This document shows, in pieces, positions 23,821 through 57,867 of a stretch of 64,000 nucleotides of DNA. The translations under genes were made by a program, and so were the position numbers. Numbering within the stretch: the stretch's first letter is position 1; the number at the start of each line of letters is the position of its first letter. The stretch is from Styela clava (taxonomy: Eukaryota). The DNA is taken from positions 8,990,001 to 9,054,000 of the forward strand of contig NC_135262.1 of assembly GCF_964204865.1 (NCBI RefSeq), given 5' to 3'. Under the pieces are notes generated by a model. It was not told the DNA's origin, did no database searches, and was given only the letters and a program-made list of their open reading frames with translations.

Positions 23821-25449
23821 CTATTGCAGCCCTCTCTTTGCTCTGTATGCATTTCTAGTCATCTCCATGGGATCTTCGTAGGTTTTCTTATGACAGGATA
23901 GTTCCGAAATATGTTTCCTCCACTCTAATATTTTAGGATATGAGCTCATGTCTTCAAAATTTTCCGAGAGTTGGTAAATCAAGCCAGTAGTGACGTAAGC
24001 AAAGAAATCTGTGTATCGAATAGCAGACAAAACGTGTTTATTTATATACCAATATGCTTCAATAATATGACATACAATTTTTATAAAACCACGGTTAGAT
24101 GTGGAAATGAAATCATATATACCTGCGACTGTCAAATGGTTTCCAGCGATAAATTTATTCTCCGTAAGAAATTTTTCAACGGCATCAAGATAGTTTTTTA
24201 CATCCTCTTCGTATTCTTTGCACATATTCGTTTCGCCTCGGAAGAAAACTCCTCCGATATTCTAAAAATATTGGGAAGAAACATTTATATTGACGACATT
24301 ACTCAAAAGAGAATGAAAGTGTATCACAAATGATGTCCTCACTACTGAGATGTTAGACTAGAGTATTCGTTATTTTTGATGCGCCATGTAATCCAGCAAA
24401 TATATATATTGACCCGAAATAAAAAGTATTTGATTGCTTTGTATTAACTTAATATATAATCATGATAGCATGTCGTGAATGATTAAACTTTGTGAGTTTT
24501 AAGGTAGGAAGTACGTATGCCAATTCGATGATCAAAGTAATCAATATTTAAAAATAATGTGTTTTTTGCTGTTCATGCTATAACGCTGTACACAAACGTT
24601 CTTTGAGTTTGGAAAAAAATTTCTTTCAAATAATTTAGTTGGAGGTTTTGGAGGTAAAACAACTACTAGGGCATCATATAGAATGTTACCAGATAATCGA
24701 AAGCTTTGGTTAATTCTGTTATATCACGGTAGAGGTAAGAGTCCACTTTGGCTTTGCATTTCGGATCTTGGGGATACAGAGCATCTTGCTTTTTTTCGTC
24801 TTCCAATTGTCGACAAATGTAAGCGGCTATCGATCGACTGAAATAAAGTCAATTACAATAGTAAATATAATGGGAAATTTGCCAAAACCCCTATTGCTTG
24901 CCTCTGTTTTACGGGGTTTCTGTTTCCTAAAAATATTCTATCAATACAGGAGGAAAATATAACTGTTGCTATCACAATTTCGACATAATTGTAACGTTTT
25001 GTGCCGAGAAGTAAATACTGTATGCCTACGATTACATCTCACGTTGGTTTCATCTTTACATTCTATGTATATATATACCAATACAATGACTGTTCATTTG
25101 GTAAAAGAGTAAAATTTGAGTGTAATATATTATAAGAAATCTAATAAAATAATCATGGATCTGGAAATTGTTTGGTTTCCTGGTTAATTTCACTCCCGAT
25201 CATTAATGCTGAACTCAGAGGTAAATTTAAATTTGAATACCTTTCTCCCATGCAGAAATCGCCATCTTTCAATCCTGGGACTTTTTCAAACACATTAATT
25301 TTCCTGTATTCTTCTGTCTTGTGTGCTCCTGATTGTACGTCAACTACTTTTTCTTCATAATCAGCTCCACAGCCCTTAAAATGTTCTAACAACATCCACA
25401 CCGCGCGACATGACGGACTCGTCGGACTAAAGAAAAATTCTAATGGCAT
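23821..25449 (-). CDS. Glutathione S-transferase, theta/delta-like (GST-E); exons 25449-25241, 24837-24690, 24261-24123, 24008-23821
   Basis: MPLEFFFSPTSPSCRAVW...EKVPGLKDGDFCMGE/SRSIAAYI...NHLTVA/DFFAY...YPKILEW...GLQ*. Confidence 0.93.
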
Positions 25450-40482: not shown

Positions 40483-41400
40483 ATGATTTCATTTTTAGCA
40501 ATTGCAATTTTGAGTGTCAGCAGCTCATTGGCTACTGATGGTGAGTTACATTGTTCTACTTTGAATATTTAATTTAGTCGAAGAGTTAGGCTATATAAAA
40601 CAGTATGCTTTTTCTATCAAGCTGTTATTAAAATTCTATCTTTTTTTTCATTTGTTTTAGGACTGTCAGAAGTTTGTGAATTTGTATCCCCGACGAATCA
40701 AGAATTCTGCTACTGGACTGAAGTTCACCAAACTTGGGATACGACGTATGCCCTCGCCCAGGAAATCTGCGAATTGAAAGGATCCAGTCTGGCGGTAATA
40801 AGAGATGAAGCAACATATCAGGCAATCATGGAAAATTTGAGAGAGAAAATCCCCGATTATTGGAACACCTTGTACGCATGGATTGGTAATACGTTTAATC
40901 CGGAGGTAGGTATAGATTACTAAAACAATCATTAAAATTTTCTCAGTTTTTCTGTTTAAAACCGCAGCTATAAATAAAGTACCTATACGCAATAAAATAC
41001 GTTGGCTTGTTTTATTAGTGTTGATGTGACAGTTGTGTTGCTCTATTTTGCTTAATTATATTATAGTAGCCCATAACAAAAAATAAATGTAGACTATATG
41101 TATCAAAGTCCCTGATTGAATTTAATGATTTGATGGAGTTCCTTTAAGTTCCACGATATCGTGAATGGTATTTTTCTTAATATTTTTTTGATTTATTTGG
41201 TTTAGACAAGAACTGTACTTCCTTCTAATTCTTACATCAAATGGTATCCAATAAACGAGCCGAGAACAGAATCCGAATCTTACGACAATTTTTTCTTGCA
41301 CCTCTACGTACAGCGTGATCCTGAGAGTGAGTTGCAAGGGATGGGCAACGTCTATCCAGAGTTTCTGTGGCCAGCTGTAGTTTGCGAATATAAACTGTGA
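40483..41400 (+). CDS. Secreted single-domain C-type lectin-like protein (165 aa); exons 40483-40540, 40661-40905, 41206-41400
   Basis: Signal peptide MISFLAIAILSVSSSLA, then CYW...YALAQEICELKGSSLAVI...AWIG...WYPINEPR...VVCEY*. Not visible in the ORF track but in frame after splicing. Confidence 0.88.
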
Positions 41401-42084: not shown

Positions 42085-43912
42085 TCACTCGAAGTCATAG
42101 TCAGAGCCATATCAATAAGTTGGCTCGAGTCACACCGAATCTTTGATAAATGATAATTCAAATCCAACTTGAGTGAAGACAATGAAAAACTTGGTCACCA
42201 CTGGAACAAAATGTTCGTTTTCCAAATATTGACTGGATTGGAAGCAAGCTCGACTTCATATTAATATAATCTTCTTCGATAGGAAAAATTCACTCCCCTC
42301 TGTCCGTCGGTTCTCTTTTAATTCAGCATCATGGCCATTAACAGTTTATAGAGAAATATAATCTATGTTTAATGTTACCATTGATGACCTAACAAGGTAC
42401 TTGTTAAGGTATCAATGATGCCACCATGGAACCGCCACACGGTGCGCAATTTTAATTTCGATTGTGTCATCACAAAAACCTAATAGGAAAAAATAATCTT
42501 CTGAAGCTCCTATGCAACCCACGCATTCTTATCTCTGGCCTAGACTACCCATACAAGACGGGAAATGCATGTATCCAACATGTATCTTATATCCCCAACA
42601 GGTCACTAGGTTGGTTTTAGTTTTCTGGTCAAAAATGACATTTGTAATTTTGTTTCTTGAAAATTATGGTGAAGAAGCTGGCTTTTTCAAAGTGGGCATT
42701 CAATTAGTGAACACATTAGCTTTGAGCAAAGCAACTTTGCTAAAACGCGTCATTTAAGTTCCATTTGCTTGTGCAATATCGCGATACTCTAGCCTCGAGT
42801 TGGCCAATCCATGAAGTGAAAATAACACGAACTGACCATTTCTTTGTTTTTGGCCTTGGTCCTGTACTGTAAAATGAAAACGTTTATTTTTTACATTCTC
42901 TTTATATTCACGTTTTACACCAGAACACACATTGGTATTTTACAAAGATGGTTCTTTCTACCATATTCCAGCTCGTACCCCATCAATAATAAACCTATTT
43001 TACTATATGGAACTCTGAAATTGATTTTTCATATTCTCTGCCTATAATAATATAAGTCAACAACATTTTGGTAGAGTAAGTCATGTCACTGATACAAAAT
43101 GTGTTCAGTGCGGTCGGCGAAGCAGTTGGAGAACTCAGTGGAAAGAATAGAAAGATAAGTGAATTGGAGACTGAAAATGATCGAAAGCAAAATGAGATAA
43201 ATAATTTGAAGAGAAATCTGGCACGAAAACAAAGTGAGATACAGAATTTGGAAATAAACTTGGGACAAAAACAAAGTGAGATTGGAAGTCTGCAAATTGC
43301 ATTGGATAATGCGATGGAGAAAAACAAACTACAGCAAAAAGGCTTGGAAAAAACCTATAAACCCAACGGCTTTGTCAAAGCATGTTGTTGTTGCTGCCTC
43401 AAAAAATCGAGGTTTGCTGTAGTTCCACGTTGATACTGAACTAAGTCAAGGGGTAATTTATCACTATACAGGCAATTTAATAAATAGAGTTTACCTTATT
43501 TTTATCCCAATATTGTATTAATTACTCAGATTTGTAATTAAAAACCGAATGTCTCGGTTTATATATTTGTTAATTATTTGCTTCGCAAACATGTTTCATT
43601 TTAATATCGTTACAATTGTCATCATACATTACATTTAATAAATTGAAAAACAATTTTGTTACGTTGACTGTATGCACTTATCACCTTTAATTCAATAAAT
43701 GTGATTTTACCATTTCATAATTATATATATACAGTTATATTTCTTGATTTTGTTAAATTACGAATAAATACTATGTTTGTAACACAATGTCTGAAATTCT
43801 GTCCTGAAGAAACAGTGCTGATGTCGTGTTTAATTGAGTTTTATGATGTTCACAAGAATTTAATTTTATTTTGATTCTTGAAAGTTTTCACGCTTTGAAA
43901 TGAAGTCTGACG
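42085..43912 (+). repeat. Arm of inverted segmental duplication (partner 55758-57867, -) carrying one cysteine-cluster gene
   Basis: Continuous reverse-complement similarity from TCACTCGAA.TCA.AGTCAGAGCCATA to TTTGAAATGAAGTCTGACG. Confidence 0.92.
43083..43433 (+). CDS. Small coiled-coil protein with Cys cluster (family member 1, 116 aa)
   Basis: Uninterrupted ATG ORF with 14-aa repeats (xxKQ[NS]EIxxL) and LEKTYKPNGFVKACCCCC; four paralogues nearby; downstream AATAAA. Confidence 0.85.
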   Translation: MSLIQNVFSAVGEAVGELSGKNRKISELETENDRKQNEINNLKRNLARKQSEIQNLEINLGQKQSEIGSLQIALDNAMEKNKLQQKGLEKTYKPNGFVKACCCCCLKKSRFAVVPR

Positions 43913-44473
43913 TCAATGCAAAGGTCACTTTATCAATATATCTAGGTAATTTGATAAAGCACCCTATTGTGCGACTTATCATCAATGGACTAGGAGAAGT
44001 TATGTCAGGATTGAATTGCTAAACACGTTTAAAGTTTCCAAATTTTTTTCATCAGTATTCGTATAGTACAAAATCCTTTAATCATATTCTATTTCATATA
44101 GGCGTAATACGAATATATTTATTATGAGCATTAACAAAAACAAATGAAGATAACGTACAATAGTCTTACACATTCTCATTAATTCGATAAAAAAATCTAT
44201 CTCAGATTGTAAATGGTCTTTTTCAAATTATTTACTACTAGTCTCTGTTTTATTAAGAGTTTGCTGCAATCAAACGAATATATTTTTGTCAAAAAACATA
44301 TGACTTGAAAACAAAATTATATAACACATCACGTTGAATTTTCTGATCATGGAACAAGTTTAAAATATTAAGGTTTTATAAACTCGATTTTGTAGTATTT
44401 GTATAAATATATAAAAACACATTATTATAGGTTTCTGCATTATTGTACACAAGACTAATGTAAGACACGCTAA

Positions 44474-44956
44474 TTATTCTTGGCTTGGAGAATCCGCGGC
44501 TCCGCAACATTTGCATGGACACATCTTACCAAAACATCCCATTTTACAATTGTTTGAAGGGCACTTACAACAGCCTGTGTTGCAACAGTTATCAGGCAGT
44601 TTACAACAACTGCAACAATCATTTTTGGGGCAAAATTCACAGCAACAACATTGTTTCCTATCAGTTTCTCCTGTTTCTTCATCATTCTCAGCATTGCCTT
44701 CTTCACCATTCTTTAAACTTTGCTTTTCATGGTCAATCTCGTCGATCTTAACTCTTTGTACAAAACAGCAGCAAGTTTTTTTTATGAATCCGCGGATTTT
44801 CATCGATTTTCGTAAAGTAGATTGCAGTTGTTCGATTTCTTCTATTTGTCTTTCATATTTTTCTTTCAAGTCACTTAGTTCTTTCGCTGCTCCCGACATT
44901 TGCTCCACCATGCCGGCAGCTAGAAATCCAGCTGCGTCAATAACCAAATCAGCCAT
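44474..44956 (-). CDS. Small coiled-coil Cys-cluster protein with acidic linker and 20-Cys tail (member 2, 160 aa)
   Basis: LRKSMKIRGFIKKTCCC family motif; tail CCCCEFCPKNDCCSCCKLPDNCCNTGCCKCPSNNCKMGCFGKMCPCKCC. Confidence 0.85.
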   Translation of the reverse strand: MADLVIDAAGFLAAGMVEQMSGAAKELSDLKEKYERQIEEIEQLQSTLRKSMKIRGFIKKTCCCFVQRVKIDEIDHEKQSLKNGEEGNAENDEETGETDRKQCCCCEFCPKNDCCSCCKLPDNCCNTGCCKCPSNNCKMGCFGKMCPCKCCGAADSPSQE

Positions 44957-46337
44957 TATTTAAATTATATTTAAACTAAAGTAATAAATTCTCTAATTCA
45001 CTAATGGAACAAATTGCAACTGATTTTTTGAATAACTAGAAGTCATTTTCAACTTTTTTTGTTTGTGTGTTCTATGGGATCAGAAACCCAAACGAACGCA
45101 TCAAATAAGATGCACACTAAAACGTCTTTGTTGTGATAAAAATATTTAGTCAAAAAGTACTCCATCAACAACAAACATATTTTCGAACAAAACACTGTTT
45201 TTCATTGTTGAAAGATATTTTATATTATCCTCACTTCCTTATCAATTGGTGAAGCTTATTTACCAATATCCTTCATTTCAAAAAATACTCGTCGTTGAGG
45301 CAATATATGGAAGACAAAGCGACAACAAAGCTAACTGATACATTCTAGTTTTTGCAGAAAACTGCTGCAATTATTTCGGAACATTCAGATGTACTAAACT
45401 GTTTCATATGTTTTTTCTTTTGATATTATCAGAATGATTAAGCAATAATTGTTGTGATTCACAAAGTATAATAAATATGTGAGGCGGAAATAAAGAACGC
45501 TGCGTAATAATATATACTTATACATATATATATACTTAAAATTAGTAATATTAATGATTTTGCATCTCCTGAACCAGATAGGTACTTGATGGACATAGTC
45601 CATTTGGTAAAAATTTGGACTATTTGAAAAAATAAAGTCTTGTCTTGTCGTCTCGATCAATGAATCTAATCGGTGTAAGAATATATTTCGAAACATACAG
45701 TTTTGCTTTTTGAGGATAAATACTGCCATGGTTTTAATTGAATGAAACACGAATTGTGTTATAATTAATTATCTATCCTACAACTGTAAGCTACATTATC
45801 TTTTAATGTATGAACAACAGTAACAAAGCGAATAAAATATGATTAGAATGACGTTATGTATTTACGTTTATACTCATGATGCATGTGAATATGATTATCG
45901 TAATGTTATCATCGCTAGATTGAATATTATTATATATGTGTAATAATTACTTGACAGTTGCAAATATGTTTTGCTGTTATATTCTATGAAGTGAGATCGA
46001 CGCATTTTAGTTTAACGCTGAAGTATGTGCAAATTATAGAATTTTTTTTCATAATCCGAATTAACTCAGATTGATTTAAAATTGAGTTGATAGATGAATT
46101 TACATAATTTAAGATTTGGAGAAATATGTTACACCCAGTTGATTCTAATTACTGCAAAAGATCTGAGTGTAAACGAATCAGCTCATATATTATGATTTGT
46201 TGATATTTTTCTGGCAGATATTATTTGAATTTGAGTTAGCTATTTGTTTGAAAACAATTTCATGAATTGTTTCATTTCAATTCATTTTTTTAAATAATGA
46301 TATTAGCGATAACAGGGTATTATAAATTTTAAACGAT

Positions 46338-46682
46338 ATGGCGGGAATGGTATTGGAAGTCGTTGGAGATGTGGCAGCTAGTGCGATGGAGCAATTCAAT
46401 GAAACAAAAATGGAAATTGAGGAATGGAAAAATAAGGCTGAAAAGAAACAAGAATATATTGACGAACTAAGAATGAGAGCGGAAAAATGTTACAATGTTA
46501 ACAAATTCGTTAAGCTATTCTGTTGTTGTTGTTTAAGTAAAGCTGTAATTCCTGAGCCAGAAGAAGAAGAGCAAGACGAGAGTGAAGAAGAAGAAGAAGA
46601 AAAAACTCCGCGAAGAAAATCAAAATCTAAAAGCAGAAAAAAGTCAGACGCTCAATTAAAAAATAAAAGGAAGTCCAAATAA
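46338..46682 (+). CDS. Small coiled-coil Cys-cluster protein with acidic then basic tail (member 3, 114 aa)
   Basis: AEKCYNVNKFVKLFCCCC family motif, poly-Glu tract and PRRKSKSKSRKK...KNKRKSK. Confidence 0.85.
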   Translation: MAGMVLEVVGDVAASAMEQFNETKMEIEEWKNKAEKKQEYIDELRMRAEKCYNVNKFVKLFCCCCLSKAVIPEPEEEEQDESEEEEEEKTPRRKSKSKSRKKSDAQLKNKRKSK

Positions 46683-47603
46683 AATATTGTTTTGTTGTTT
46701 CATTGTGATTCTACATTCCAATGCATTTGTGATATTTACCAAACTCATCCACAAATGATTATTAATCAAGCTTTTGTTCAGAAGTCAAATATTTATAATC
46801 CATTGTTGCTGAAGTATTCAACTGAAAATTCAGTTTTCGATCAGTCATTGCTATTTCAAACTGTAGAATATGTTCAAGCTTTACTTGTCCAAAACTTATT
46901 GAACTTAATATATAATTTACTAGGGACATCATGCCTCCAGATTCCGCTCAAAATATGATTTAGTTTGTACTTTGATAAGGACTACATTCTAACATTTCCT
47001 CATCTGATGAAATTTTTCAATCGTACTATTGAAGTTATTTTATCTTCTGTTTGATATATTTCTATAGGACAATTACGATTTCGTCGATCTTCAAAGTTTT
47101 ATTGATAAAAACTGTATAGTATATGTTAAACTAAATTATTAAAAAAAATAATCATGTGACATTGACAATGAGTATATATGAATCAAACACACTTATTTAT
47201 TGAGATATTATTTATATAACATTTAGAAAAAAAGGGTAATTTACTTGTGTAAATAAACGGAGTAGAGTAATATGAAATATAGCTAAAAAAAAGTTATCAC
47301 CAAGCAAAACGAAACATGCTTTAATAAATTTTGTACGTGATGAACGTACTGTTTTAGTGTCTACAGTTTGCATAACACTTTTAATTCTTATAGAATGTAT
47401 TATTGTCTGTATTGGCGTTTCTTATTACCACGTTTGATTTGATTTAATTTTGGGTTGTACAATGTACATTACAAAATATGACATACAAAAAGGAATGAAT
47501 ATTGTACGTTTCTGGAATACAATCTGATAGCATTCAAATTTGGAGATAGAATATTTACAATTACTATACAAAGTGGGATGGTGAATTAGACTCGTTTGTC
47601 GTT

Positions 47604-47837
47604 TCAGATCCGCGCTTCATTGTAATGAACTTTGGATGTCTTCGGTTTAAATTTTGTTATGCAACAGCAGCAAAACACTTTTATAAAACTGTTGACTTTG
47701 TATGAGTTTTTTAGTGCTTCTTCCAATTCCACTATCCGGCGTTCTTTTTCTCGCAGTAATTCATTTGTTCCGGAGTATTCTTTATAACCAGCCACAGCGC
47801 CAGCTCCAAGCGCTGCTCCAAAGGATGCCGCCGCCAT
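47604..47837 (-). CDS. Minimal coiled-coil Cys-cluster protein (member 4, 77 aa; ATG at 47837)
   Basis: MAAASFGAALGAGAVAGYKEYSG...LREKERRIVELEEALKNSYKVNSFIKVFCCCC. Confidence 0.82.
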   Translation of the reverse strand: MAAASFGAALGAGAVAGYKEYSGTNELLREKERRIVELEEALKNSYKVNSFIKVFCCCCITKFKPKTSKVHYNEARI

Positions 47838-47902
47838 TATATCAGTTATATTATTGAAAATAGAACTAATATTGTAATTATTCACAGAAAAAATATAAAT
47901 TT

Positions 47903-49825
47903 TTCAATTATCTAGGTAAATTTTATACCGTTACTAGACTATAAATTCGAGTGTTGCTAGTATGCAAAAGTTTATAATTATTATATACATTACGCGATAA
48001 CAAGCATGATAGATTGATCATTAAACTGTGATTTTGTGAGCGAATGCAAGAAGTTGAGTATTATTTTAAAAGGACGTTACCTGAGTAGAAATTATTTCAT
48101 AACACAGTAAATGTATTCTGATCCAGTTAACTAGATTAAAATTATATCAAGAATATAATACCTCATCAGAAATGTTATAGATTAATATTCTCATTCAACT
48201 CTACACAAAGTATCATGCCCTGTGGTCTGATTGCACATATGAGTTGATTGCTAAATTCTAATAAGAATTCACTAAAAATTAACCTTTCTGAAACCTTTCA
48301 TTAGTATACAAATATTCTCGATATTATTACAGCACTTTCACACAATAGCCTAAGTATAATTTTCAATTCTCTAACACGAGTCACAATTTATCCATAAGTA
48401 TGTGCATGAAGATTGCTGGCAGATCATTTCACGTATGAACAAGTAGTTTACGGATTCCTCCACTATTCACTTTGCTCTACAAACAATTAGTAATAATCAA
48501 CTGGTTAGCTATTCCCACTTCTACCTAAACCGGTAATTGGTAGAAAATCCGCATATGATTAAGCTGTCATAATTAAGTTCCTTTCTTTAGCAAAATGCGG
48601 GAATTTAATCCTAAGACTAGTATTTAAGTAGCGTAAAATACATATAAAGATTCCCGGAACAATGATTTTATATTAACTCAGAATTCATAATTTACATATA
48701 AGCTTAGACGACAACAACAGCTCCTTTGATTCAAGTGGTGTTTCATTGTCGTCAATTTGTATATTGTTTGAACAAGATCAAATTTGCCCTGACAAGCCCA
48801 ACCAACACTTTGACTTAGCCAATATTTGTTGAATGTTTGATTCAAAGTCAAAAGTTCATACAGATCTGAATACCGCTTATAGATGGAATTAGCGCATATA
48901 AAAATAAGGAAGAATGTATTTCTTATTTAAAGTGTTTTTACATACATTCACAAAACATGTTAAAAGGCAAATATCAATTTGATAAATAGAACTTAGATTT
49001 CTTGCCAAGTTTCAATTATCTAGGTAAATTTCATACCGTTAGCAGATCATTAATTCAAGTGTTGCTAGTATGCAAAAGTTTATAATTATTATATATATTA
49101 CGCGATAACAAGCATGATAGATTGAGCATTAAACTTTGATTTGGTGAGCGAATGACAAGCAGTTGAGTGTTATTTTAAAAGGACGTTTTCTGAGTAGAAA
49201 TTATTTCATAACACAGTAAATGTATTCTGATCCGGTTAACTAGATTAAAATTATATCAAGAATATAATAACTCATCAGAAATTTTATAGAATCTCTAATA
49301 AATATTCTCATTCAACTTTACACAAAGTATCATGCCCTGTGGTCTGATTGCACATATGAGTTGATTGCTAAATTCTAATAAGAATAAACTAAAAATTAAC
49401 CTTTCTGAAACCTTTCATTAGTATACAAATATTCTTGATATTATTACAGCACTTTCACACAATAGCCTAAGTATAATTTTCAATTCTCTAACACGAGTCA
49501 CAATTTATCCATAAGCACGTGCGTGAAGATTGCTGGCAGATCATTTCACGTATGAACAAGTAGTTTACGGATTCCTCCACTATTCACTTTGCTCTACAAA
49601 CAATTAGTAATGATCAACTGGTTAACTATTCCCACTTCTACCTAAACCGGTAATTGGTAGAAAATCCGCATATGATTAAGCTGTCATGATTAGGTTCCTT
49701 TCTTTAGCAAAATGCGGGAATTTTATCCTAAGACTAGTATGTAAGTAGCGTAAAATACATATGAAGATTCCCGGATCAATGATTACTTACCGATCTTAAG
49801 ATCGGTAAGTATGTTGATAGGTATT

Positions 49826-49864
<39 letters not shown>

Positions 49865-50406
49865 ATGTTTGTCTGTTTGTCTGTTAGATGAACGCGATAT
49901 CTCACGTGGTTGAATCTGCTCCAAATTTTGCAGGTGCATGCATCTTACTTCGGACCAGAAGCCTATAGATTTTGGGTTAATTATGTCGTATAATTAGCGA
50001 GTTATTAACTAATTACCGATCTAAGATCGATAAGTCTTCGGTCTCCGACCGATATTCTCGTTTTATATTTTCTCAGAATTCATAATTTACATATAAGCTT
50101 AGACGACAACAACAGCTCCTTTGATTCAAGTGGTGTTTCATTGTCGCCAATTTGTTATCATATATTGTTTGAACAAGATCAAATTTGCCCTGACAAGCCC
50201 GACCAACACTTTGACTTAACCAATATTTGTTGATTGTTTGATTCAAAGTCAAAAGTTCATACAGATCTGAATACCGCTTATAGATGGAATTATCATATAT
50301 AAAAATAAGGAAGAATGTATTTATTATTGAAAGTGTTTTTACATACATTCACAAAACATGTTAAAAGGCTAATATCAATTTGATAAATAGAACTTAGATT
50401 TCTTGC
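47903..50406. repeat. Tandem duplication of a ~1.1-kb non-coding unit (47903-49010; 49011-50406 with HINE insertion); third, partly deleted copy at 57886-58516
   Basis: TTCAATTATCTAGGTAAATT starts both units; near-identity runs to GAACTTAGATTTCTTGC. Confidence 0.92.
49783..50062 (+). mobile_element. HINE-like family 1 copy, inserted into a T-run
   Basis: TACTTACCGATCTTAAGATCGGTAAGTA hairpin, (GTCT)n and 3' TCGGTCTCCGACCGA stem-loop. The empty site AATGATTTTATATT is present in the paralogous units. Confidence 0.8.
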
Positions 50407-52317
50407 GTTTCGTACGTAGTCGTACGTAGCACTTCACCTAACATTTTAAGCTGTACAGATACATGAAGAGTGTACCTACTTTGAAACTTGGGCATGTTTG
50501 TCAAGACCAGAAGACTCGGAAATTAGACGAACGATTATAAAATACAAACACAAATCGAGGTATGGGCCACAAACGAAAGCTATATAAAGATGCTAGCAAC
50601 AATGAATTCATATTAAACTGAGTTTCTAATTTACATATAAGCGCATACGATCGTAAAATCCCCTCCCTACGTGCCGAGTGGTGGTTCAAGGTCGTCAGTT
50701 GTCTTTGTAATCATCCAATATTTGAAAATCAAATTTGCCCGTAAGACGAGCCTTCGACTTATCGACCTATTTTGTGTTACCTATACATCTCACCTGGAAT
50801 ATTAAGATGTCCAGATTTTTAAAAAAATGCAAAAGTTATAAATGTAGGCTTCTACGGTTTTGCTAAAAGCTTAGTCTGATCAAGAGGGATATTTGTCAAG
50901 AAACGATTATACACGAAAACTTCCTGGAAATGTTAAACATACGGTCGCACTGTATAAGTAGAATTCATTCTACACAAGGTAGCTGTACTTTAAGTTGCTC
51001 TTGTATTCGTTTAGTTGAATTACTCCAACAAAATGAAGATTTTTGTGTTTATACTTTGTTTCGTATTCCTGGATGGCATGAACATGAGAGTAACATCTCA
51101 TCGCACAGCAAAGAAATGTGTTTTACCAAAGTCTCAGAAGATTAACTGGAACAAGGTTTGTTTATTATTTTATGCTGCGCTCCCGTTTTAGAGTTTGTCA
51201 AGCCGTCCGTCCCGTCCAACCTCGAAAATAACTAGCTAACGATAAACTACAAATAACATAGTAAAGAGAAAGTATATTTGTTTTATTAATAAAAAAAAAC
51301 GTTGAAAACATGCGAATGGGAGGTAAATAATGAAATAAATGAAGGAAAGTTTCAAAAACAAGCCAATTTTGTCGCAACAGCTCTCCACAATCTCTAACCA
51401 ATAAAGAAATATAAATAACCAAATGACGGCGGGCCAGATAAAATCTAACAAATATATTTGTTTTAAAAAGTTGTCTGCGTCCCGTTGTGGGTCGCGACCC
51501 ACCATTTGTGATCCGCTGTATAGGTTTTCTAATCATATTTGTATAATAGAAAACGTTGGGAAGTCAGTTATAAATATATTGCTCACGGTATAAAGTCACA
51601 TCATACCAATCAATGCACAGGTGTCTATCTACACCAGTTGAACCAAACACAAACTTATTTTTACGTTCGTAGTACTTAGTGGGGATGGTAAACGAATTTT
51701 TGAGCAATTGAAGAATCATACCAATTATGAATGCCTATAAAACATGTAAAGCTAGAAAGATAATTTTAAATTTCCTTGACTAATTTGACATGAAAATAAA
51801 CTATGCTACTCATCAATGGCTCTGAGTTGCCGCTGTCTTGATACTACACGTAACTTTTTTGTATTATATATGAAATAATTGATGTTGAGTTTCACAGATT
51901 CGTGGAAATTGGTACGAAGCCTTAAACAGAAAAAGTCCGTTGGAAAAACTATTAAGCTGTGAAGCCTGGAGTCATGTGGTATCAATTAAGAATGGCATCA
52001 AGCTAAATCTCAGAAACGAAGATTGGTGAGTGATGATGTAGTTGAACGACTATTCTTCTGCCTGTCAAATAATATATATATATATATATATGCAAAGTTT
52101 ACTTCATTTTATACAGGAAAACTCACACATATAGCGTTCTTCCGATGTTCATTAGAATTACAAAATCAGGCACAGGAATTTGGAAACCGCCGACAGGTAA
52201 GTTCCCATATTTTTTGTGCTGTTGTATTGAATAACATACAATTTTTTCTTTTTCTTTTGTCAATCGTAGGTTGTGTAATCTCAAATGTAGAATATTTTCA
52301 ATTTCAAACAATTTGTA

Positions 52318-52622
52318 AACGAGATAGCGATCAGAGACCGCCGACTTATCGATCTAGCGGCGTGTATCCTTCGCTCTGACTCAATAGCGATACCGCGTGT
52401 CTTATCACTAATTATCTAATAACTCGCTAATTAAAGGGCATAATTTATCCAAAATCAATAGGTTCTGGTCCGAGATATGATGATTACACATGCACAAAAT
52501 TCGGAGCAGATTCAGTCGCGAATTCGTGAGGTATCGCGTAACATACGAAAGTGTCCAACAGACAGGCAGACAAACAAACAAATACCTATCAACATACTTA
52601 CCGATCAAGATCGATAAGTAAT
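52318..52622 (-). mobile_element. HINE-like family 1 copy in lipocalin-1 intron 3
   Basis: Same termini and core as 9961-10282; the corresponding copy in the duplicate is at 60433-61598. Confidence 0.75.
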
Positions 52623-52827
52623 AAAAGTTCAATGACACCATAACGAAAGTTAGCATGGGGATTGTCATTAGTGTCACAATATTACAACCATGACCGATGT
52701 GTAAGTACAGTTTAGTACTGAAATTATAGCATAGTTAGTAAGAATATTAAAATACCAAAATATTAGACATTAGAAAAATGAGTGATATAATCTTGCGTTC
52801 TCTCTGCAAAATAGTGTTGTTGTATTA

Positions 52828-53125
52828 TTACTTATCGATTTTATTCGGTAAGTATGTTGATAGGTATTTGTCTGTCTGTATGTCTGTTAGATGCACGCGA
52901 TATCTCACGAAAGCAAGATTGAATCTTTTCCAAATTTTGCATGTTCATTAATCTTATCTCGAACCAGAAGCCTATTGATTTTGGGCAAATTATGTCGTAT
53001 AATTAGCGAGTTATCAAATAATTAGTGATGGGACACAAGGTGTCACTATGGAGTTAGAGCGCTGTTTTGGGGGATCCCCTAACTTTCGATCGATAAGTCT
53101 TCGGTCTCTGACCGATATTCTCATT
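52828..53125 (+). mobile_element. HINE-like family 1 copy in lipocalin-1 intron 3
   Basis: Nearly full-length reverse complement of 9961-10282. Confidence 0.8.
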
Positions 53126-55757
53126 TATAGTATTGACATTGATTCAAATTTAAAATACCCAATTACTGAGATCAAATTACTTCTTTTTAGAATACTTTCA
53201 TGTGCCTTAATTAAAAGATGTCACAATATCCTATTATCCGCTGCAGCGTATCATGTCATATAATATGCTATACATTTTCTAAACTTGTCATTGTACTTGT
53301 TCAAAAGGGTTATATGTAGTCAATTCAACATGTATTTTGACGAAAAGCTTACATTTTTTATTGTTTTTATTTTATACGCAGTGAAAAAATGGTTTGCCTC
53401 TTTGAAACAGAGTTCCGCATCACAATATTGGAAAAAAGCTCATCATGGGTAAATGCAAAATACAATTTATATAAAACATAGTATTATATTTGTTAAAGCT
53501 TTAGTTTGGAATGACATTCTGTCTCATAGTTACTGAAGCTAACAGAATATTTAACAATGGAGGTAAAGCAAAATATCTTTGAATAAACTAAAGAAAAATT
53601 GTTTGCCCAAACTTTTAGATTGCAACCTCCAAATCTGCTGAGCTGTTTGAAATGAATAACCATTTCTGAATCTACGATATGCTTTTACAAGTTTGCTTCT
53701 GTATGTTGCTTTCAGCTATGATAAAATGCTTACTTAACCCATTTTCTTATATACTTTTGCAGAATTGAAATCGATGCAAAAAGCAGGATTCGCATTTTCT
53801 ACAGATTACAAAACCTACTTCATCGTCATGTCATGTGGACGGAACGGTAAACTACAAGTCATTATTATACAGTACATTTGATAGTGTTTTATTTTCTAAT
53901 CAGCTAAATTGTTCAAATGTAACTCGTCGACCATTCAAGAAAGTTAATCTTTCATCAACTATAACTTCTGACTGAAATATTATTTTATTTCTAAATCCGA
54001 TAATGGTATATTAAAGTAATGAAACTGTTATAAAATGCCAATACGTTTCACGCTAGATTGTCCCTTAGTTTTTCTACTCAGATCTTCGTTTACCACTTCC
54101 AGAAATATAGCAAGTTTGAAATATCAGGAATTAAGAGCAATGCCTACGTAAATCATTCATGTATCAAGTGCAATAAAATAGTATTTCAACTATTTTTAAC
54201 AGGCGAGAAATACGTATGGGCGCACACGCGACATCCCTATCCCACTGCTGAATCTTTGGTTGCTATCTTCAACAGTTTGGTGAAAATTGGACACGGATGG
54301 AATGACGAGCCATTGTACTTGTCACAATGCGTCAAGATTTCTAACACATAGCCCAACCTCAAATCATTTCTGTAGAAATGATAATAAACACATACATATT
54401 CAGAGAGAAATTTTATAAAGAGGAAAAGGGAACCGCGAATGATAAGAAAAATAGTAATGAAGCTGCCCTAATACAGTTAATGACACACTTGATAGATGTA
54501 AATGACATTGTAATGTAATCTGAAATTTATTATGAAATGTGATTGAAATAAATGATGTGAAGGGTTTTCACTCAGAACTATGTCATGTTCTTCAATAACA
54601 GTAACAAAGCCACAGCAAAAATTCAGCAAATCAACCCATATTTACACTTCTCATTCAATAAACCTGTAGGCTGTAAAGTCAATCATGAACTTTTAAACCA
54701 GCGTTTCCCAACCTTTTTCGATCGCGGACTATTTTCTCTCCGGCGAAAACCTTTGTGGACTCAATGTGCGTTTATTGCAACCGTACTCTGTGTAAAAAGC
54801 AATAAAACCAAACACAACAAAACTTTAACGAATTTCAAAATCGAAAATTCGCCGCAATTACGCGTTCGTTAAAAGAGTCGAATTTTCTTGAGTATAAAAT
54901 GGCCTTTTCTGTCGCATAATATTCAATCCAATGACGACGACGAAAATTTTAAATGTCCTTCTATAAAAATATTCTTATAATTCTGCACAGACATATTTCA
55001 GATAATTTATTCATATTTCATTGCAGTTCTTCGACTTTATCTTAAGAAAGTCAAAACATTCTGTCCGCGTCGTGTTGTAAATATTAAGTGTGTTCATGGT
55101 AACTCGCGGTTGCTTTGATTTACGACAAGATGAAAGCATTACTGCTTTAAAATGGCAAGGCAATCTGGAACTATGATGATGTGAGAATATATTGCCCGAT
55201 TATATTTAGTTTGGATAAATATTTTTTTGCGATCTTGCGAATTTGTTGTCGCCGTTAGAAAAATCCTACCATCTGCTATAAATTTCCAGAAAGTACAACT
55301 TGATTTAGCACTTAGTAAAAATATATTTGAAGTATATCAGTAAATTAAAAAAACATATTCATCGCCTTGCTTTATTATTAATTTAATTGTGATCAATATA
55401 ATCTGCGGGCGTGTTGACAAAATAAAAGCAATACTACTCAGGAAATATCATGACAATGCGTGGACACAAAAATGCGTGAAAGTGCCTGATTATATTTTGA
55501 TTCGTATTTTTGTGAATTTGACAAATCTGAGCTGTTCGTACCAATGTGGAGGCTAAAAAAGCGTTTTTAATCGCGGACCATCATAAAACAAAACTTGAGG
55601 TGTTCTCCGTTTTATTTTTAGTATTGCCGCTTTTCAATTTAAAAAATTTGGGTCGCCACCATTGACACTTAGCATCAGAAAAAAAATTATTCCTCGTTGT
55701 TCGAACTCGCGAAACACCATTTAGGTATATATCGAAGCGTGTGCAGGCTAGTGTTTT

Positions 55758-57867
55758 CGTCAGACTTCATTTCAAAGCGTGGAAACTTTCAAGAAATAAA
55801 ATGAAATTAAATTTTTGTGAACATCATAATAAACTCAATTAAACACGAAATCAGCACTGTTTCTTCAGGACAGAATTTCAGATATTGTGTTACAAACATA
55901 GTATTTATTCGTAATTTAACAAAATCAAGAAATATAACTGTATATATATAATTATGAAATGGTAAAATCACATTTAAAGAATTAAAGGTAATAAGTGCAT
56001 ACAGTCAACGTAACAAAAGTGTTTTTCAATTTATGAAATGTAATGTATGATGACAATTGTAACGATATTGGAATAAAACATGTTTGCCAAGCAAATAATT
56101 AACTGATATATAAACCGAGACATTCGGTTTTTAATTAATCTGAGTAATTAATACAATAATGGGATAAAAATACGATAAACTCTATTAATTAAATTGCCTG
56201 TATAGTGATAAATGACCTTTCGACTTAGTTCAGTATCAACGTGGAACTACAGCAGCGCTCGATTTTTTGAGACAGCAACAACAACATGCTTTGACAAAGC
56301 CGTTGGCTTTATAGGTTTTTTCCAAGCCCTTTTTCATTTTCTTGATTTCCTTTTGCTGTAGTTTGTTTTCAGCCATTGATTTATCCAATGCAATTTGCAA
56401 ATTCTCAATCTCACTTTGTTTTTGTTCCAAGTTTATTTCCAAATTATTAATCTCTTTTTGCTTTGTATCATTCTCGGTCTTCAATTCAATTATATTTCTG
56501 TTCTTTCCACTAAGTTCTCCAACTGCTTCGCCGACTGCACCGAACACAGATTGTGTCAGTGACATGATTTACTCAACCAAAATGTTGTTGACTTATATTA
56601 ATATAGGCAGAGAATATGAAAAATCAATTTCAGAGTTAGATATAGTAAAATAGGTTTATTATTACAATTTTTCTTGAAAACGCAATAGAGAGACAATAGT
56701 ATTCCAGTCGGAAATTGGATATATCTTCCCTTACACTTCTGAAGAGTGTCCAATAGGTTTCTACTGATCTAAAAGGATTCTTGTTTCTGTTCCATCTATA
56801 AAGAAGACCCAGCGATCTTCAGGAAAAACAAACGAGAAACAACACAAACGAGTAGCAACGGCATGCCTGTATCCTAGCAATATTGGTCTCAGAGAGAGAA
56901 GATTTGTAAAAGCCTTTTGTTAGGCAAATCATTTATTTGTTGAATAGATGGTAGGCCTACAGATGTAACGCCGCGACCGAAAGCTATTATTCAAGAAATA
57001 AATGACTTCTCTAACAAAAGGTTTTCTCAAATCTGAACCATCGTTGTAAAATATCAATGTGTGTTCTGTTGTAAAACGTGAATATAAAGAGAATATAAAA
57101 ATTGAACTTTTCCCTTTTGCAGTACAGGACCAAGGCAAAAAACAAAGAAATGGTCGGTTCGTGTGATTTTCCACTTCATGGATTGGCGAACTCGAGTCTA
57201 GAGTATTGCGATATTGCACAAGCAAATGGAACTCAAATGACGCGTTTTAGCGCAAGTTGCGCATGCTTTGCTCAAAGCTAATGTGTTCACTAATTGAATG
57301 TTCCACTTTGAAAAACCCAGCTTTAAATCTTCTTCCCCATAATTTTCAAAAAACAAAATTACAAATGTCATTTTGACCAAAAAACCAATACCAACCTAGT
57401 GACCTGTTGGGGATGTTGGATACATGCATTTCCCGTCTTGCATGAGTAGGTTAGGCCAGAGATAAGAATGCGAATAAGAATGCAAAGGAGCTTCAGAAGT
57501 TTATTTTCTCCTATTAGGTTTTTGTGATGACACAATCAAAATAAAAAATTGCGCACCGTGTGGCGGTTTCATAAAGGCATTAAACATTGATTACATTTCT
57601 CTCTAAACTGTTGATGGCCATGATGCTGAATTAAACGAGAACCGTTTGGCCAGAGGGGGAGAATTTTTTCGTATCGAGGAAATTATATTAATATGATGTC
57701 GAGCTTGCTTCCAATAAAGTCAATATTTAGAACAATTTGTTCCAGTGGTGATGAGACGCAAGTAATTCATTGACTTTACTCGAGTTGGATTTGAGTTATC
57801 ATTTATCAAAGACTCGGTGTGAATCGAGCAAACCTAATGATATGGCTCTGACTCTGATTTCGAGTGA
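55758..57867 (-). repeat. Arm of inverted segmental duplication (partner 42085-43912)
   Basis: See the partner arm; this arm has a ~370-bp unrelated segment at ~56665-57040. Confidence 0.92.
56236..56565 (-). CDS. Small coiled-coil Cys-cluster protein (member 5, 109 aa; recent paralogue of 43083-43433)
   Basis: MSLTQSVFGAVGEAVGELSG...LEKTYKANGFVKACCCCC; the indels relative to the paralogue keep the frame. Confidence 0.85.
   Translation of the reverse strand: MSLTQSVFGAVGEAVGELSGKNRNIIELKTENDTKQKEINNLEINLEQKQSEIENLQIALDKSMAENKLQQKEIKKMKKGLEKTYKANGFVKACCCCCLKKSSAAVVPR

What the first reader, a model, noticed from the sequence alone, without database searches (positions are those of the whole stretch)
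43083..56565. Unassigned five-gene family of small coiled-coil proteins with a conserved F[VI]KxxCCC(C) cysteine cluster
Seen: five intron-free ORFs (43083+, 44956-, 46338+, 47837-, 56565-) share one architecture despite low identity. Each has a ~20-aa Gly/Ala/Val-rich N-terminal segment ending in E-x-(S/F), a coiled coil of variable length, then [LA]-x(3)-[YM]-[KN]-x-[NR]-x-F-[VI]-K-x-x-C-C-C-(C), then a free tail. None has a signal peptide. Known: Cys runs next to hydrophobic and basic residues are typical S-palmitoylation anchors (SNAP-25, cysteine-string protein). Inference: these are cytosolic rods anchored at both ends (N-terminal helix plus palmitoyl cluster), loosely like tetherin in topology, that could hetero-oligomerise and display different tails. 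They lie between lectin and lipocalin genes. I cannot place them in any known family, so this is the best candidate for an undescribed system here.
Basis: partly seen in the sequence, partly recalled or inferred. Interest (0 to 1): 0.85.

Follow-up and report, generated by a model that had tools for sequence, protein, structure and literature searches.

The report
Orphan sea-squirt cysteine-cluster coiled-coil genes
This sea-squirt genome region holds a small family, seen only in this genome so far, of single-exon genes for short helical rod proteins that end in a run of four or five cysteines, most likely a fatty-acid membrane anchor; the genes look real and selected, but expression and function are untested.

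Summary
The family is larger than reported. It has seven intact copies and two frameshifted pseudogenes, all within 445 kb of one contig and nowhere else in the 377-Mb genome.

Protein-level selection is clear. In the 25-codon motif block, codons that keep the same residue differ almost only at third positions (3/0/52). Indels inside the ORFs are whole heptads (7 and 14 residues). dN/dS among the three youngest copies is 0.40-0.61.

No Pfam family, solved structure or protein among about 15 billion matches the family. Styela clava proteins are in that collection, so the genes appear to be unannotated there.

AlphaFold gives one long helix, a hinge, and a short helix that carries the cysteines. 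No segment is hydrophobic enough to cross a membrane.

My best reading is cytosolic coiled-coil rods fixed to a membrane by S-acylation of the cysteine cluster, as in syntaxin 11 or SNAP-25. That is analogy, not homology. The N-terminal "second anchor" is not supported.

It is a real orphan family of moderate interest.

The parts
43083..43433 (+). Gene A, 116 aa, single exon. Predicted helix 4-92, hinge 93-95, short Cys-bearing helix 96-109.
43043..43050 (+). TATA-like box about 35 nt before the ATG of A, conserved in copies E and F.
43182..43282 (+). 42-nt (14-codon, two-heptad) tandem repeat, 2.4 copies, inside ORF A. It is the source of rod-length variation.
43371..43394 (+). Motif F-V-K-x-C5 of A.
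43763..43768 (+). AATAAA 330 nt after the stop of A, inside a block conserved in A, E and F. Likely poly(A) signal.
44474..44956 (-). Gene B, 160 aa. Same core (C-C-C-F), followed by an acidic linker and a tail that holds most of its 23 cysteines. Motif at 44765-44788.
46338..46682 (+). Gene C, 114 aa. Predicted helix 3-68, then a disordered acidic-then-polybasic tail. Motif at 46506-46529.
47604..47837 (-). Gene D, 77 aa, the shortest rod. Motif at 47664-47687.
56236..56565 (-). Gene E, 109 aa, an inverted duplicate of A (82% protein identity). Motif at 56275-56298.
55904..55909 (-). AATAAA 327 nt after the stop of E, homologous to the one after A.

Best explanation
This is a tandemly duplicated family of single-exon genes that no search found outside this genome. 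It has seven intact copies and two pseudogenes within 445 kb. The genes encode 77-160-residue cytosolic helical proteins.

Each protein is a coiled-coil rod whose length changes by whole heptads. In six of the seven copies the rod starts with a Gly/Ala/Val-rich stretch. That stretch more likely extends or packs the coil than binds membrane. The rod ends in a conserved hinge (Y-[KN]-x-[NR]-[GKS]) and a short helix, F-[VIL]-K-x-x-C-C-C-[CF]-[LIV]-x-[KR].

Inferred, not shown: DHHC acyltransferases S-acylate several of these cysteines. This pins the C-terminal end of an oligomeric rod to the cytosolic face of a membrane, and the variable tail (short basic, acidic plus polybasic, or a second cysteine string) then lies at the membrane surface.

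Shown: the ORFs, the family size, selection at protein level, the helical prediction, the lack of a membrane-spanning segment, and the lack of homologues.
For: - **Selection on the motif.** In the 25-codon motif block of the five subfamilies, 105 codon pairs keep the same residue. They differ at codon positions 1/2/3 in 3/0/52 cases, so the block is conserved as protein while synonymous sites are saturated.
- **Youngest copies.** A, E and F give dN/dS of 0.40-0.61, with Fisher p of 0.015, 0.007 and 0.09. Their ORF indels are 15, 42 and 21 nt, all in frame; the 42- and 21-nt ones equal 14 and 7 residues. Indels in the flanks are 1-27 nt with no such rule.
- **Pseudogenes.** Two B-type copies at similar divergence carry 13-, 7-, 16-, 5- and 1-nt indels and stops, so unselected copies decay.
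- **Gene signals.** A, E and F share a TATA-like box and an AATAAA about 330 nt after the stop.
- **Structure.** AlphaFold predicts helix 4-92 (pLDDT 88-98 in the core), a break, then a short Cys helix in A, and helix 3-68 in C. No membrane-spanning segment was found.
- **Motif context.** Hydrophobic and basic residues flank the cysteine run in all seven copies.
- **Precedent.** Syntaxin 11 has no membrane span and depends on an S-acylated cysteine-rich region after its coiled coil; SNAP-23 and SNAP-25 do likewise (PMC4049605).
Against:
- None of the seven proteins, nor anything similar, is in the 15-billion-protein collection. That collection does hold Styela clava nr/UniRef entries, so the genes were not annotated there.
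- Between A and E the ORF is more diverged (0.116) than its flanks (0.06-0.07). Constraint on the rod is therefore weak, or the ORF is diversifying.
- The Cys helix has low model confidence (pLDDT about 52).
- Acylation is inferred from sequence context alone. No acylation predictor or assay was available.
Confidence: 0.45

Rival explanations
1. The cysteines form a metal-thiolate or redox site. The cluster at the end of an oligomeric coil, together with the cysteine-rich tail of B, binds Cu, Zn, Cd or another metal, as a metallothionein-like buffer or sensor.
For: B carries 23 cysteines, most in a 60-residue tail, and that tail is homologous in both pseudogenes. Cytosolic cysteine clusters are either lipidated or metal-bound (general knowledge).
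Against: No metallothionein family was hit in Pfam at E up to 1. Four to five contiguous cysteines in a helix are poor geometry for chelation. Six of the seven members have no cysteine outside the cluster, apart from one in C. Metal-response elements are not enriched upstream: one match in seven promoters. The conserved hydrophobic and basic flanks fit a membrane better.
Confidence: 0.15
2. These are structural proteins that cross-link by disulfides, in the manner of keratin-associated or sperm cysteine-rich proteins, and are expressed in one tissue such as testis or epidermis.
For: Intronless, tandemly duplicated, fast-evolving small genes are typical of such classes (general knowledge). The ORF of A against E evolves faster than its flanks. 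The best solved-structure match is a keratin coil, but only at noise level.
Against: The keratin match is generic coiled-coil similarity (E 0.007 against the PDB only). The single compact cluster with basic flanks is conserved far more strictly than the loose repeats of cross-linking proteins.
Confidence: 0.12
3. The ORFs are relics. They once coded but are now silent and drifting, or they are transcribed without making stable protein.
For: No annotation or transcript-derived protein exists in the collection. Two copies are already dead. The rod is only weakly constrained.
Against: Seven frames of 77-160 codons remain open in DNA with a 7.5% stop frequency per codon. Indels preserve heptads. 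The third-position pattern in the motif is 3/0/52.
Confidence: 0.13
4. They are exons of larger spliced genes, not complete genes.
For: Most genes in this genome have introns, and a GTAAGT-like string lies just before the ATG of A.
Against: The ATG follows an in-frame stop within 1-4 codons in A, B, C and E. Every copy ends in a stop after a variable tail. The duplication unit of A, E and F runs from about 100 nt upstream to about 440 nt downstream and includes a TATA-like box and an AATAAA.
Confidence: 0.04

Closest known systems
Syntaxin 11 / syntaxin 19 and SNAP-25 / SNAP-23 (SNAREs without a membrane span)
   Same: A cytosolic coiled coil is followed directly by a compact cysteine cluster with hydrophobic and basic neighbours. 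S-acylation of that cluster replaces a transmembrane anchor (PMC4049605).
   Different: No SNARE or SNAP-25 Pfam match at E up to 1, and no SNARE among solved-structure matches at E up to 10. The rods of B, C and D are only about 25-35 residues, too short for a 53-residue SNARE motif. There is no Habc domain. This is analogy, not homology.
Cysteine-string protein (DNAJC5)
   Same: A dense cysteine string in a cytosolic protein. The tail of B resembles one.
   Different: No J domain. The core cluster has 3-5 cysteines, not about 14.
   Same: A coiled-coil rod with something membrane-related at an end.
   Different: Tetherin is extracellular, with an N-terminal membrane span and a GPI anchor. 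Here there is no membrane span and no signal peptide, and the N-terminal segment is not membrane-like.
Metallothioneins
   Same: High cysteine content in the tail of B.
   Different: No family match. The other members have only the one cluster. The helical coiled-coil body is unlike metallothioneins.

Membership tests
SNARE (Qa/Qbc, lipid-anchored type) | SNARE motif recognisable by profile (Pfam SNARE, SNAP-25) | tested here: not met
   No such family at E up to 1 for any of the five proteins. No SNARE chain at E up to 10 with the family profile.
SNARE (Qa/Qbc, lipid-anchored type) | Coiled coil of about 53 residues (16 layers) | tested here: not met
   A, E and F have about 70 helical residues, but B, C and D have only 25-35 before the hinge.
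SNARE (Qa/Qbc, lipid-anchored type) | Cysteine cluster after the coil in place of a membrane span | tested here: met
   Present in all seven copies. No membrane span.
S-acylated peripheral membrane proteins (functional class) | Cytosolic cysteines next to hydrophobic and basic residues | tested here: met
   F-[VIL]-K before and [LIV]-x-[KR] after the run in all seven copies. No signal peptide or membrane span.
S-acylated peripheral membrane proteins (functional class) | Thioester-linked acyl chains and membrane association | not testable with these tools
   Needs acyl-biotin exchange and fractionation.
Tetherin-like doubly anchored rods | A membrane anchor at the N-terminal end | tested here: not met
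   Highest Kyte-Doolittle mean over 19 residues is 1.0-1.3. Acidic residues lie in the segment, the hydrophobic moment is 0.17-0.45, and the segment is absent in G.
Metallothionein | Match to a metallothionein profile | tested here: not met
   B has no such match at E up to 1.
Cysteine-string protein | J domain | tested here: not met
   No DnaJ match.

The most novel reading that the evidence does not exclude
A tunicate-specific, previously undescribed class of lipid-anchored coiled-coil rods. Rod length is tuned in whole heptads by a 42-nt repeat, and interchangeable tails (basic, acidic-polybasic, cysteine-string) are presented at a membrane. It would be a fast-evolving membrane-surface scaffold, possibly tied to immunity or metal handling, given the neighbouring lectin genes and the tail of B.
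Probability: 0.3. Interest if true: 0.55.

Novelty: new variant of a known kind. Interest (0 to 1): 0.4.

Why it matters
If the genes are expressed, this is a compact and experimentally easy example of a new protein family built from two simple parts: a coiled coil of adjustable length and a very strong candidate acylation cluster. The family has no detectable relatives. It could show how taxon-restricted genes acquire membrane targeting, and the minimal motif could be tested as a portable acylation tag. It also marks seven probable genes missing from the public protein set for this species. It does not bear on a long-standing open question, and orphan families are common in fast-evolving tunicate genomes.

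Tried and rejected
- **Pfam.** Scanning the five proteins gave only sub-threshold generic coiled-coil families.
- **Word-indexed protein searches.** One with C and one with the seven-sequence alignment both returned nothing.
- **Profile search of 1.84 billion representatives.** It returned one bacterial repeat coiled coil at E 7e-4, which I judged spurious on reading it.
- **Exact look-up of eight sequences.** None is in the collection.
- **Structure-based searches.** The profile against solved structures gave keratin, Hv1 and endophilin coils at noise level. Foldseek on the model of C gave no match.
- **ESM Atlas.** Two calls gave only bZIP or coiled-coil clusters scoring below 0.9.
- **Rfam.** No match in 41-58 kb.
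- **Promoter comparison.** No k-mer is shared by four of the five subfamilies, and MRE, HSE, NF-kB, ARE and CRE sites are not enriched.
- **Other family loci.** Their neighbourhoods contain nothing recurrent.
- **RNA evidence.** I stopped there and did not use read laying.
- I re-ran it from the files.
- **Mobile-element origin.** Rejected: there are nine copies, all in one 445-kb interval.
Full report
**Observation.** The ORF listing and a MAFFT alignment confirm five ORFs at the stated places: A 43083-43433 (+), B 44474-44956 (-), C 46338-46682 (+), D 47604-47837 (-) and E 56236-56565 (-). They share the stated order of parts: a Gly/Ala/Val-rich start, a heptad-rich middle, the motif F-[VI]-K-x-x-C-C-C, then a free tail. 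Invariant columns are the initiator Met, one Gly, and F, K and three C of the motif.

**Family size.** A profile of the five, run over the window's own 377-Mb assembly, finds four more places, all on the same contig. F is an intact A-like copy (L005:1486-1836:-). G is an intact 91-aa copy about 10 kb past the window's end; it has the motif but no Gly-rich start (L008:1426-1701:+). The other two are B-type pseudogenes (L006, L010). A second profile that included F and G found nothing further.

The back-translated motif occurs 40 times in the genome against 67 for the reversed control. Eight of the 40 are family members, and none of the other 32 lies in a family-like frame. The family is therefore seven intact genes and two dead ones within 445 kb.

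**Are they genes?** Several independent signs say the frames are, or recently were, under protein-level selection.
- Between subfamilies the synonymous sites are saturated. Yet in the 25-codon block around the motif, 105 codon pairs keep the same residue and differ at positions 1/2/3 in 3/0/52 cases.
- Among the young copies A, E and F, dN/dS is 0.40, 0.45 and 0.61 (Fisher p 0.015, 0.007, 0.09). Polarised changes avoid the hinge and motif almost entirely.
- The three indels inside these ORFs are 15, 42 and 21 nt. The last two equal 14 and 7 residues, so the rod changes length by whole heptads. Indels in the flanks are 1-27 nt with no such rule. Tandem Repeats Finder sees the 42-nt unit as a 2.4-copy repeat inside A.
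- The two B-type pseudogenes, at about 85% identity to B, carry a 13-nt insertion, deletions of 7, 16, 5 and 1 nt, and stops. Unselected copies therefore break quickly.
- The ATG follows an in-frame stop within 1-4 codons in A, B, C and E, and a purine sits at -3 in A, B, C, D, E and F.
- The unit shared by A, E and F runs from about 100 nt upstream, with a TATA-like box about 35 nt before the ATG, to about 440 nt downstream, with a conserved AATAAA about 330 nt after the stop.

**A caveat on strand.** The long antisense ORFs over A, B and E share wobble positions with the sense frame, so the third-position test alone cannot pick the strand. The antisense frames lack a proper ATG and are absent over C and D, so the sense frames are the consistent ones.

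**Points against.** None of the proteins, nor anything similar, is in the large protein collection. As a control, a GST-like ORF from the same window finds "glutathione S-transferase 1-like, Styela clava" at 72% identity. This agrees with earlier notes of the scan that name the species, and it shows that this species' public proteins are in the collection, so the family is unannotated there. Finally, between A and E the ORF is more diverged (0.116) than the flanks (0.06-0.07), which points to weak constraint or diversification of the rod.

**What the proteins look like.**
- AlphaFold with the seven-row alignment models C as one helix from 3 to 68 with a disordered tail (mean pLDDT 69).
- A is modelled as helix 4-92 (pLDDT 88-98 for residues 21-85), a break at 93-95, and a short helix 96-109 carrying the cysteines at low confidence.
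- No 19-residue window exceeds a Kyte-Doolittle mean of 1.3, so there is no membrane span or classical signal peptide.
- The N-terminal segment contains Asp or Glu and has a hydrophobic moment of 0.17-0.45. In B and C it stays in the heptad register of the rod from the first residue. I read it as part of the coil or a small-residue packing surface, not an anchor.
- The tails differ. A, E, F, D and G have short basic tails. C has an acidic run followed by a polybasic run. B has an acidic linker and a second, very cysteine-rich stretch (23 Cys in the whole protein).

**Comparison with known families.** Pfam gives only generic coiled-coil families below their cut-offs and no SNARE, SNAP-25, DnaJ or metallothionein match. 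The profile against all solved chains gives coiled-coil noise. Foldseek finds nothing, and the ESM Atlas returns only bZIP-like clusters scoring below 0.9.

The nearest functional analogues are SNAREs without a membrane span. In syntaxin 11 a cysteine-rich region after the coiled coil is S-acylated and required for membrane association, and SNAP-23 and SNAP-25 behave likewise (PMC4049605). Here the cysteine run is flanked by F-[VIL]-K and [LIV]-x-[KR] in all seven copies. This is a resemblance in design. Membership of the SNARE family was tested and is not met.

**Mechanism proposed.** Shown: a family of selected ORFs, found only in this genome so far, that encode helical, non-secreted, non-spanning proteins with an invariant cysteine cluster. 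Inferred: the rods oligomerise, the cluster is multiply S-acylated, and the C-terminal end with its tail is thereby held at a cytosolic membrane face.

Rivals are a metal-thiolate site, disulfide cross-linking structural proteins of a single tissue, silent relics, and exons of larger genes. Their weights are given in the Rival explanations section of this report.

**Context.** Upstream lie a fibrinogen/intelectin exon and a C-type lectin exon, both weak partial Pfam hits. I did not verify a lipocalin. A and E are inverted duplicates. An 8.1-8.8-kb direct duplication (48.2-54.7 kb and 58.0-63.5 kb) flanks E. Neighbourhoods of F, G and the pseudogenes show nothing recurrent. No shared promoter word and no enrichment of metal, heat or NF-kB sites was found.

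**Verdict.** This is an undescribed orphan family built on a known design principle. Interest is moderate and depends on expression data I could not obtain.

Noticed in passing
window 48181-54700 and 58000-63494: A direct segmental duplication with a period of 8.1-8.8 kb at 92-98% identity. It flanks gene E, and part of it is present a third time at 49298-50406. Its content was not identified (no Pfam hit for its ORFs).
   Followed up: partly
window 42995-43327 (-), 44511-44963 (+), 56342-56653 (+): Long antisense ORFs over A, B and E. They share wobble positions with the sense frames and lack a proper ATG. They are by-products of the Glu/Lys/Cys-rich sense codons, not genes.
   Followed up: yes
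window 46306-46314 and 47995-48003: The word GCGATAAC occurs upstream of C and, in the opposite orientation relative to the gene, upstream of D. About 0.06 occurrences per 400 nt are expected. It may be a shared element of the divergent C/D neighbours, or chance.
   Followed up: no
window 23821-24225 (-): A GST-like ORF 72% identical to a Styela clava 'glutathione S-transferase 1-like' protein. It is probably a paralogue, or a frame that reads through an intron. I used it only as a database control.
   Followed up: partly
L048:5500-7356 (+) (contig 17, about 9.4325-9.4344 Mb): A run of long ORFs that look like a hAT/BED-type transposase, about 4 kb from family member F. Not checked against Pfam.
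   Followed up: no
L006:1430-1900 and L005/L048 (contig 17, 9.4267-9.4285 Mb): The B-type pseudogene and the A-like gene F lie tail to tail, as A and B do in the window, but in mirror order. The A-B pair was therefore duplicated as a unit and one partner then died.
   Followed up: partly
window 40573-40920 (+): An exon-like frame with a partial C-type lectin match (E 0.001, below the Pfam cut-off). It is the nearest recognisable coding piece upstream of the family.
   Followed up: partly
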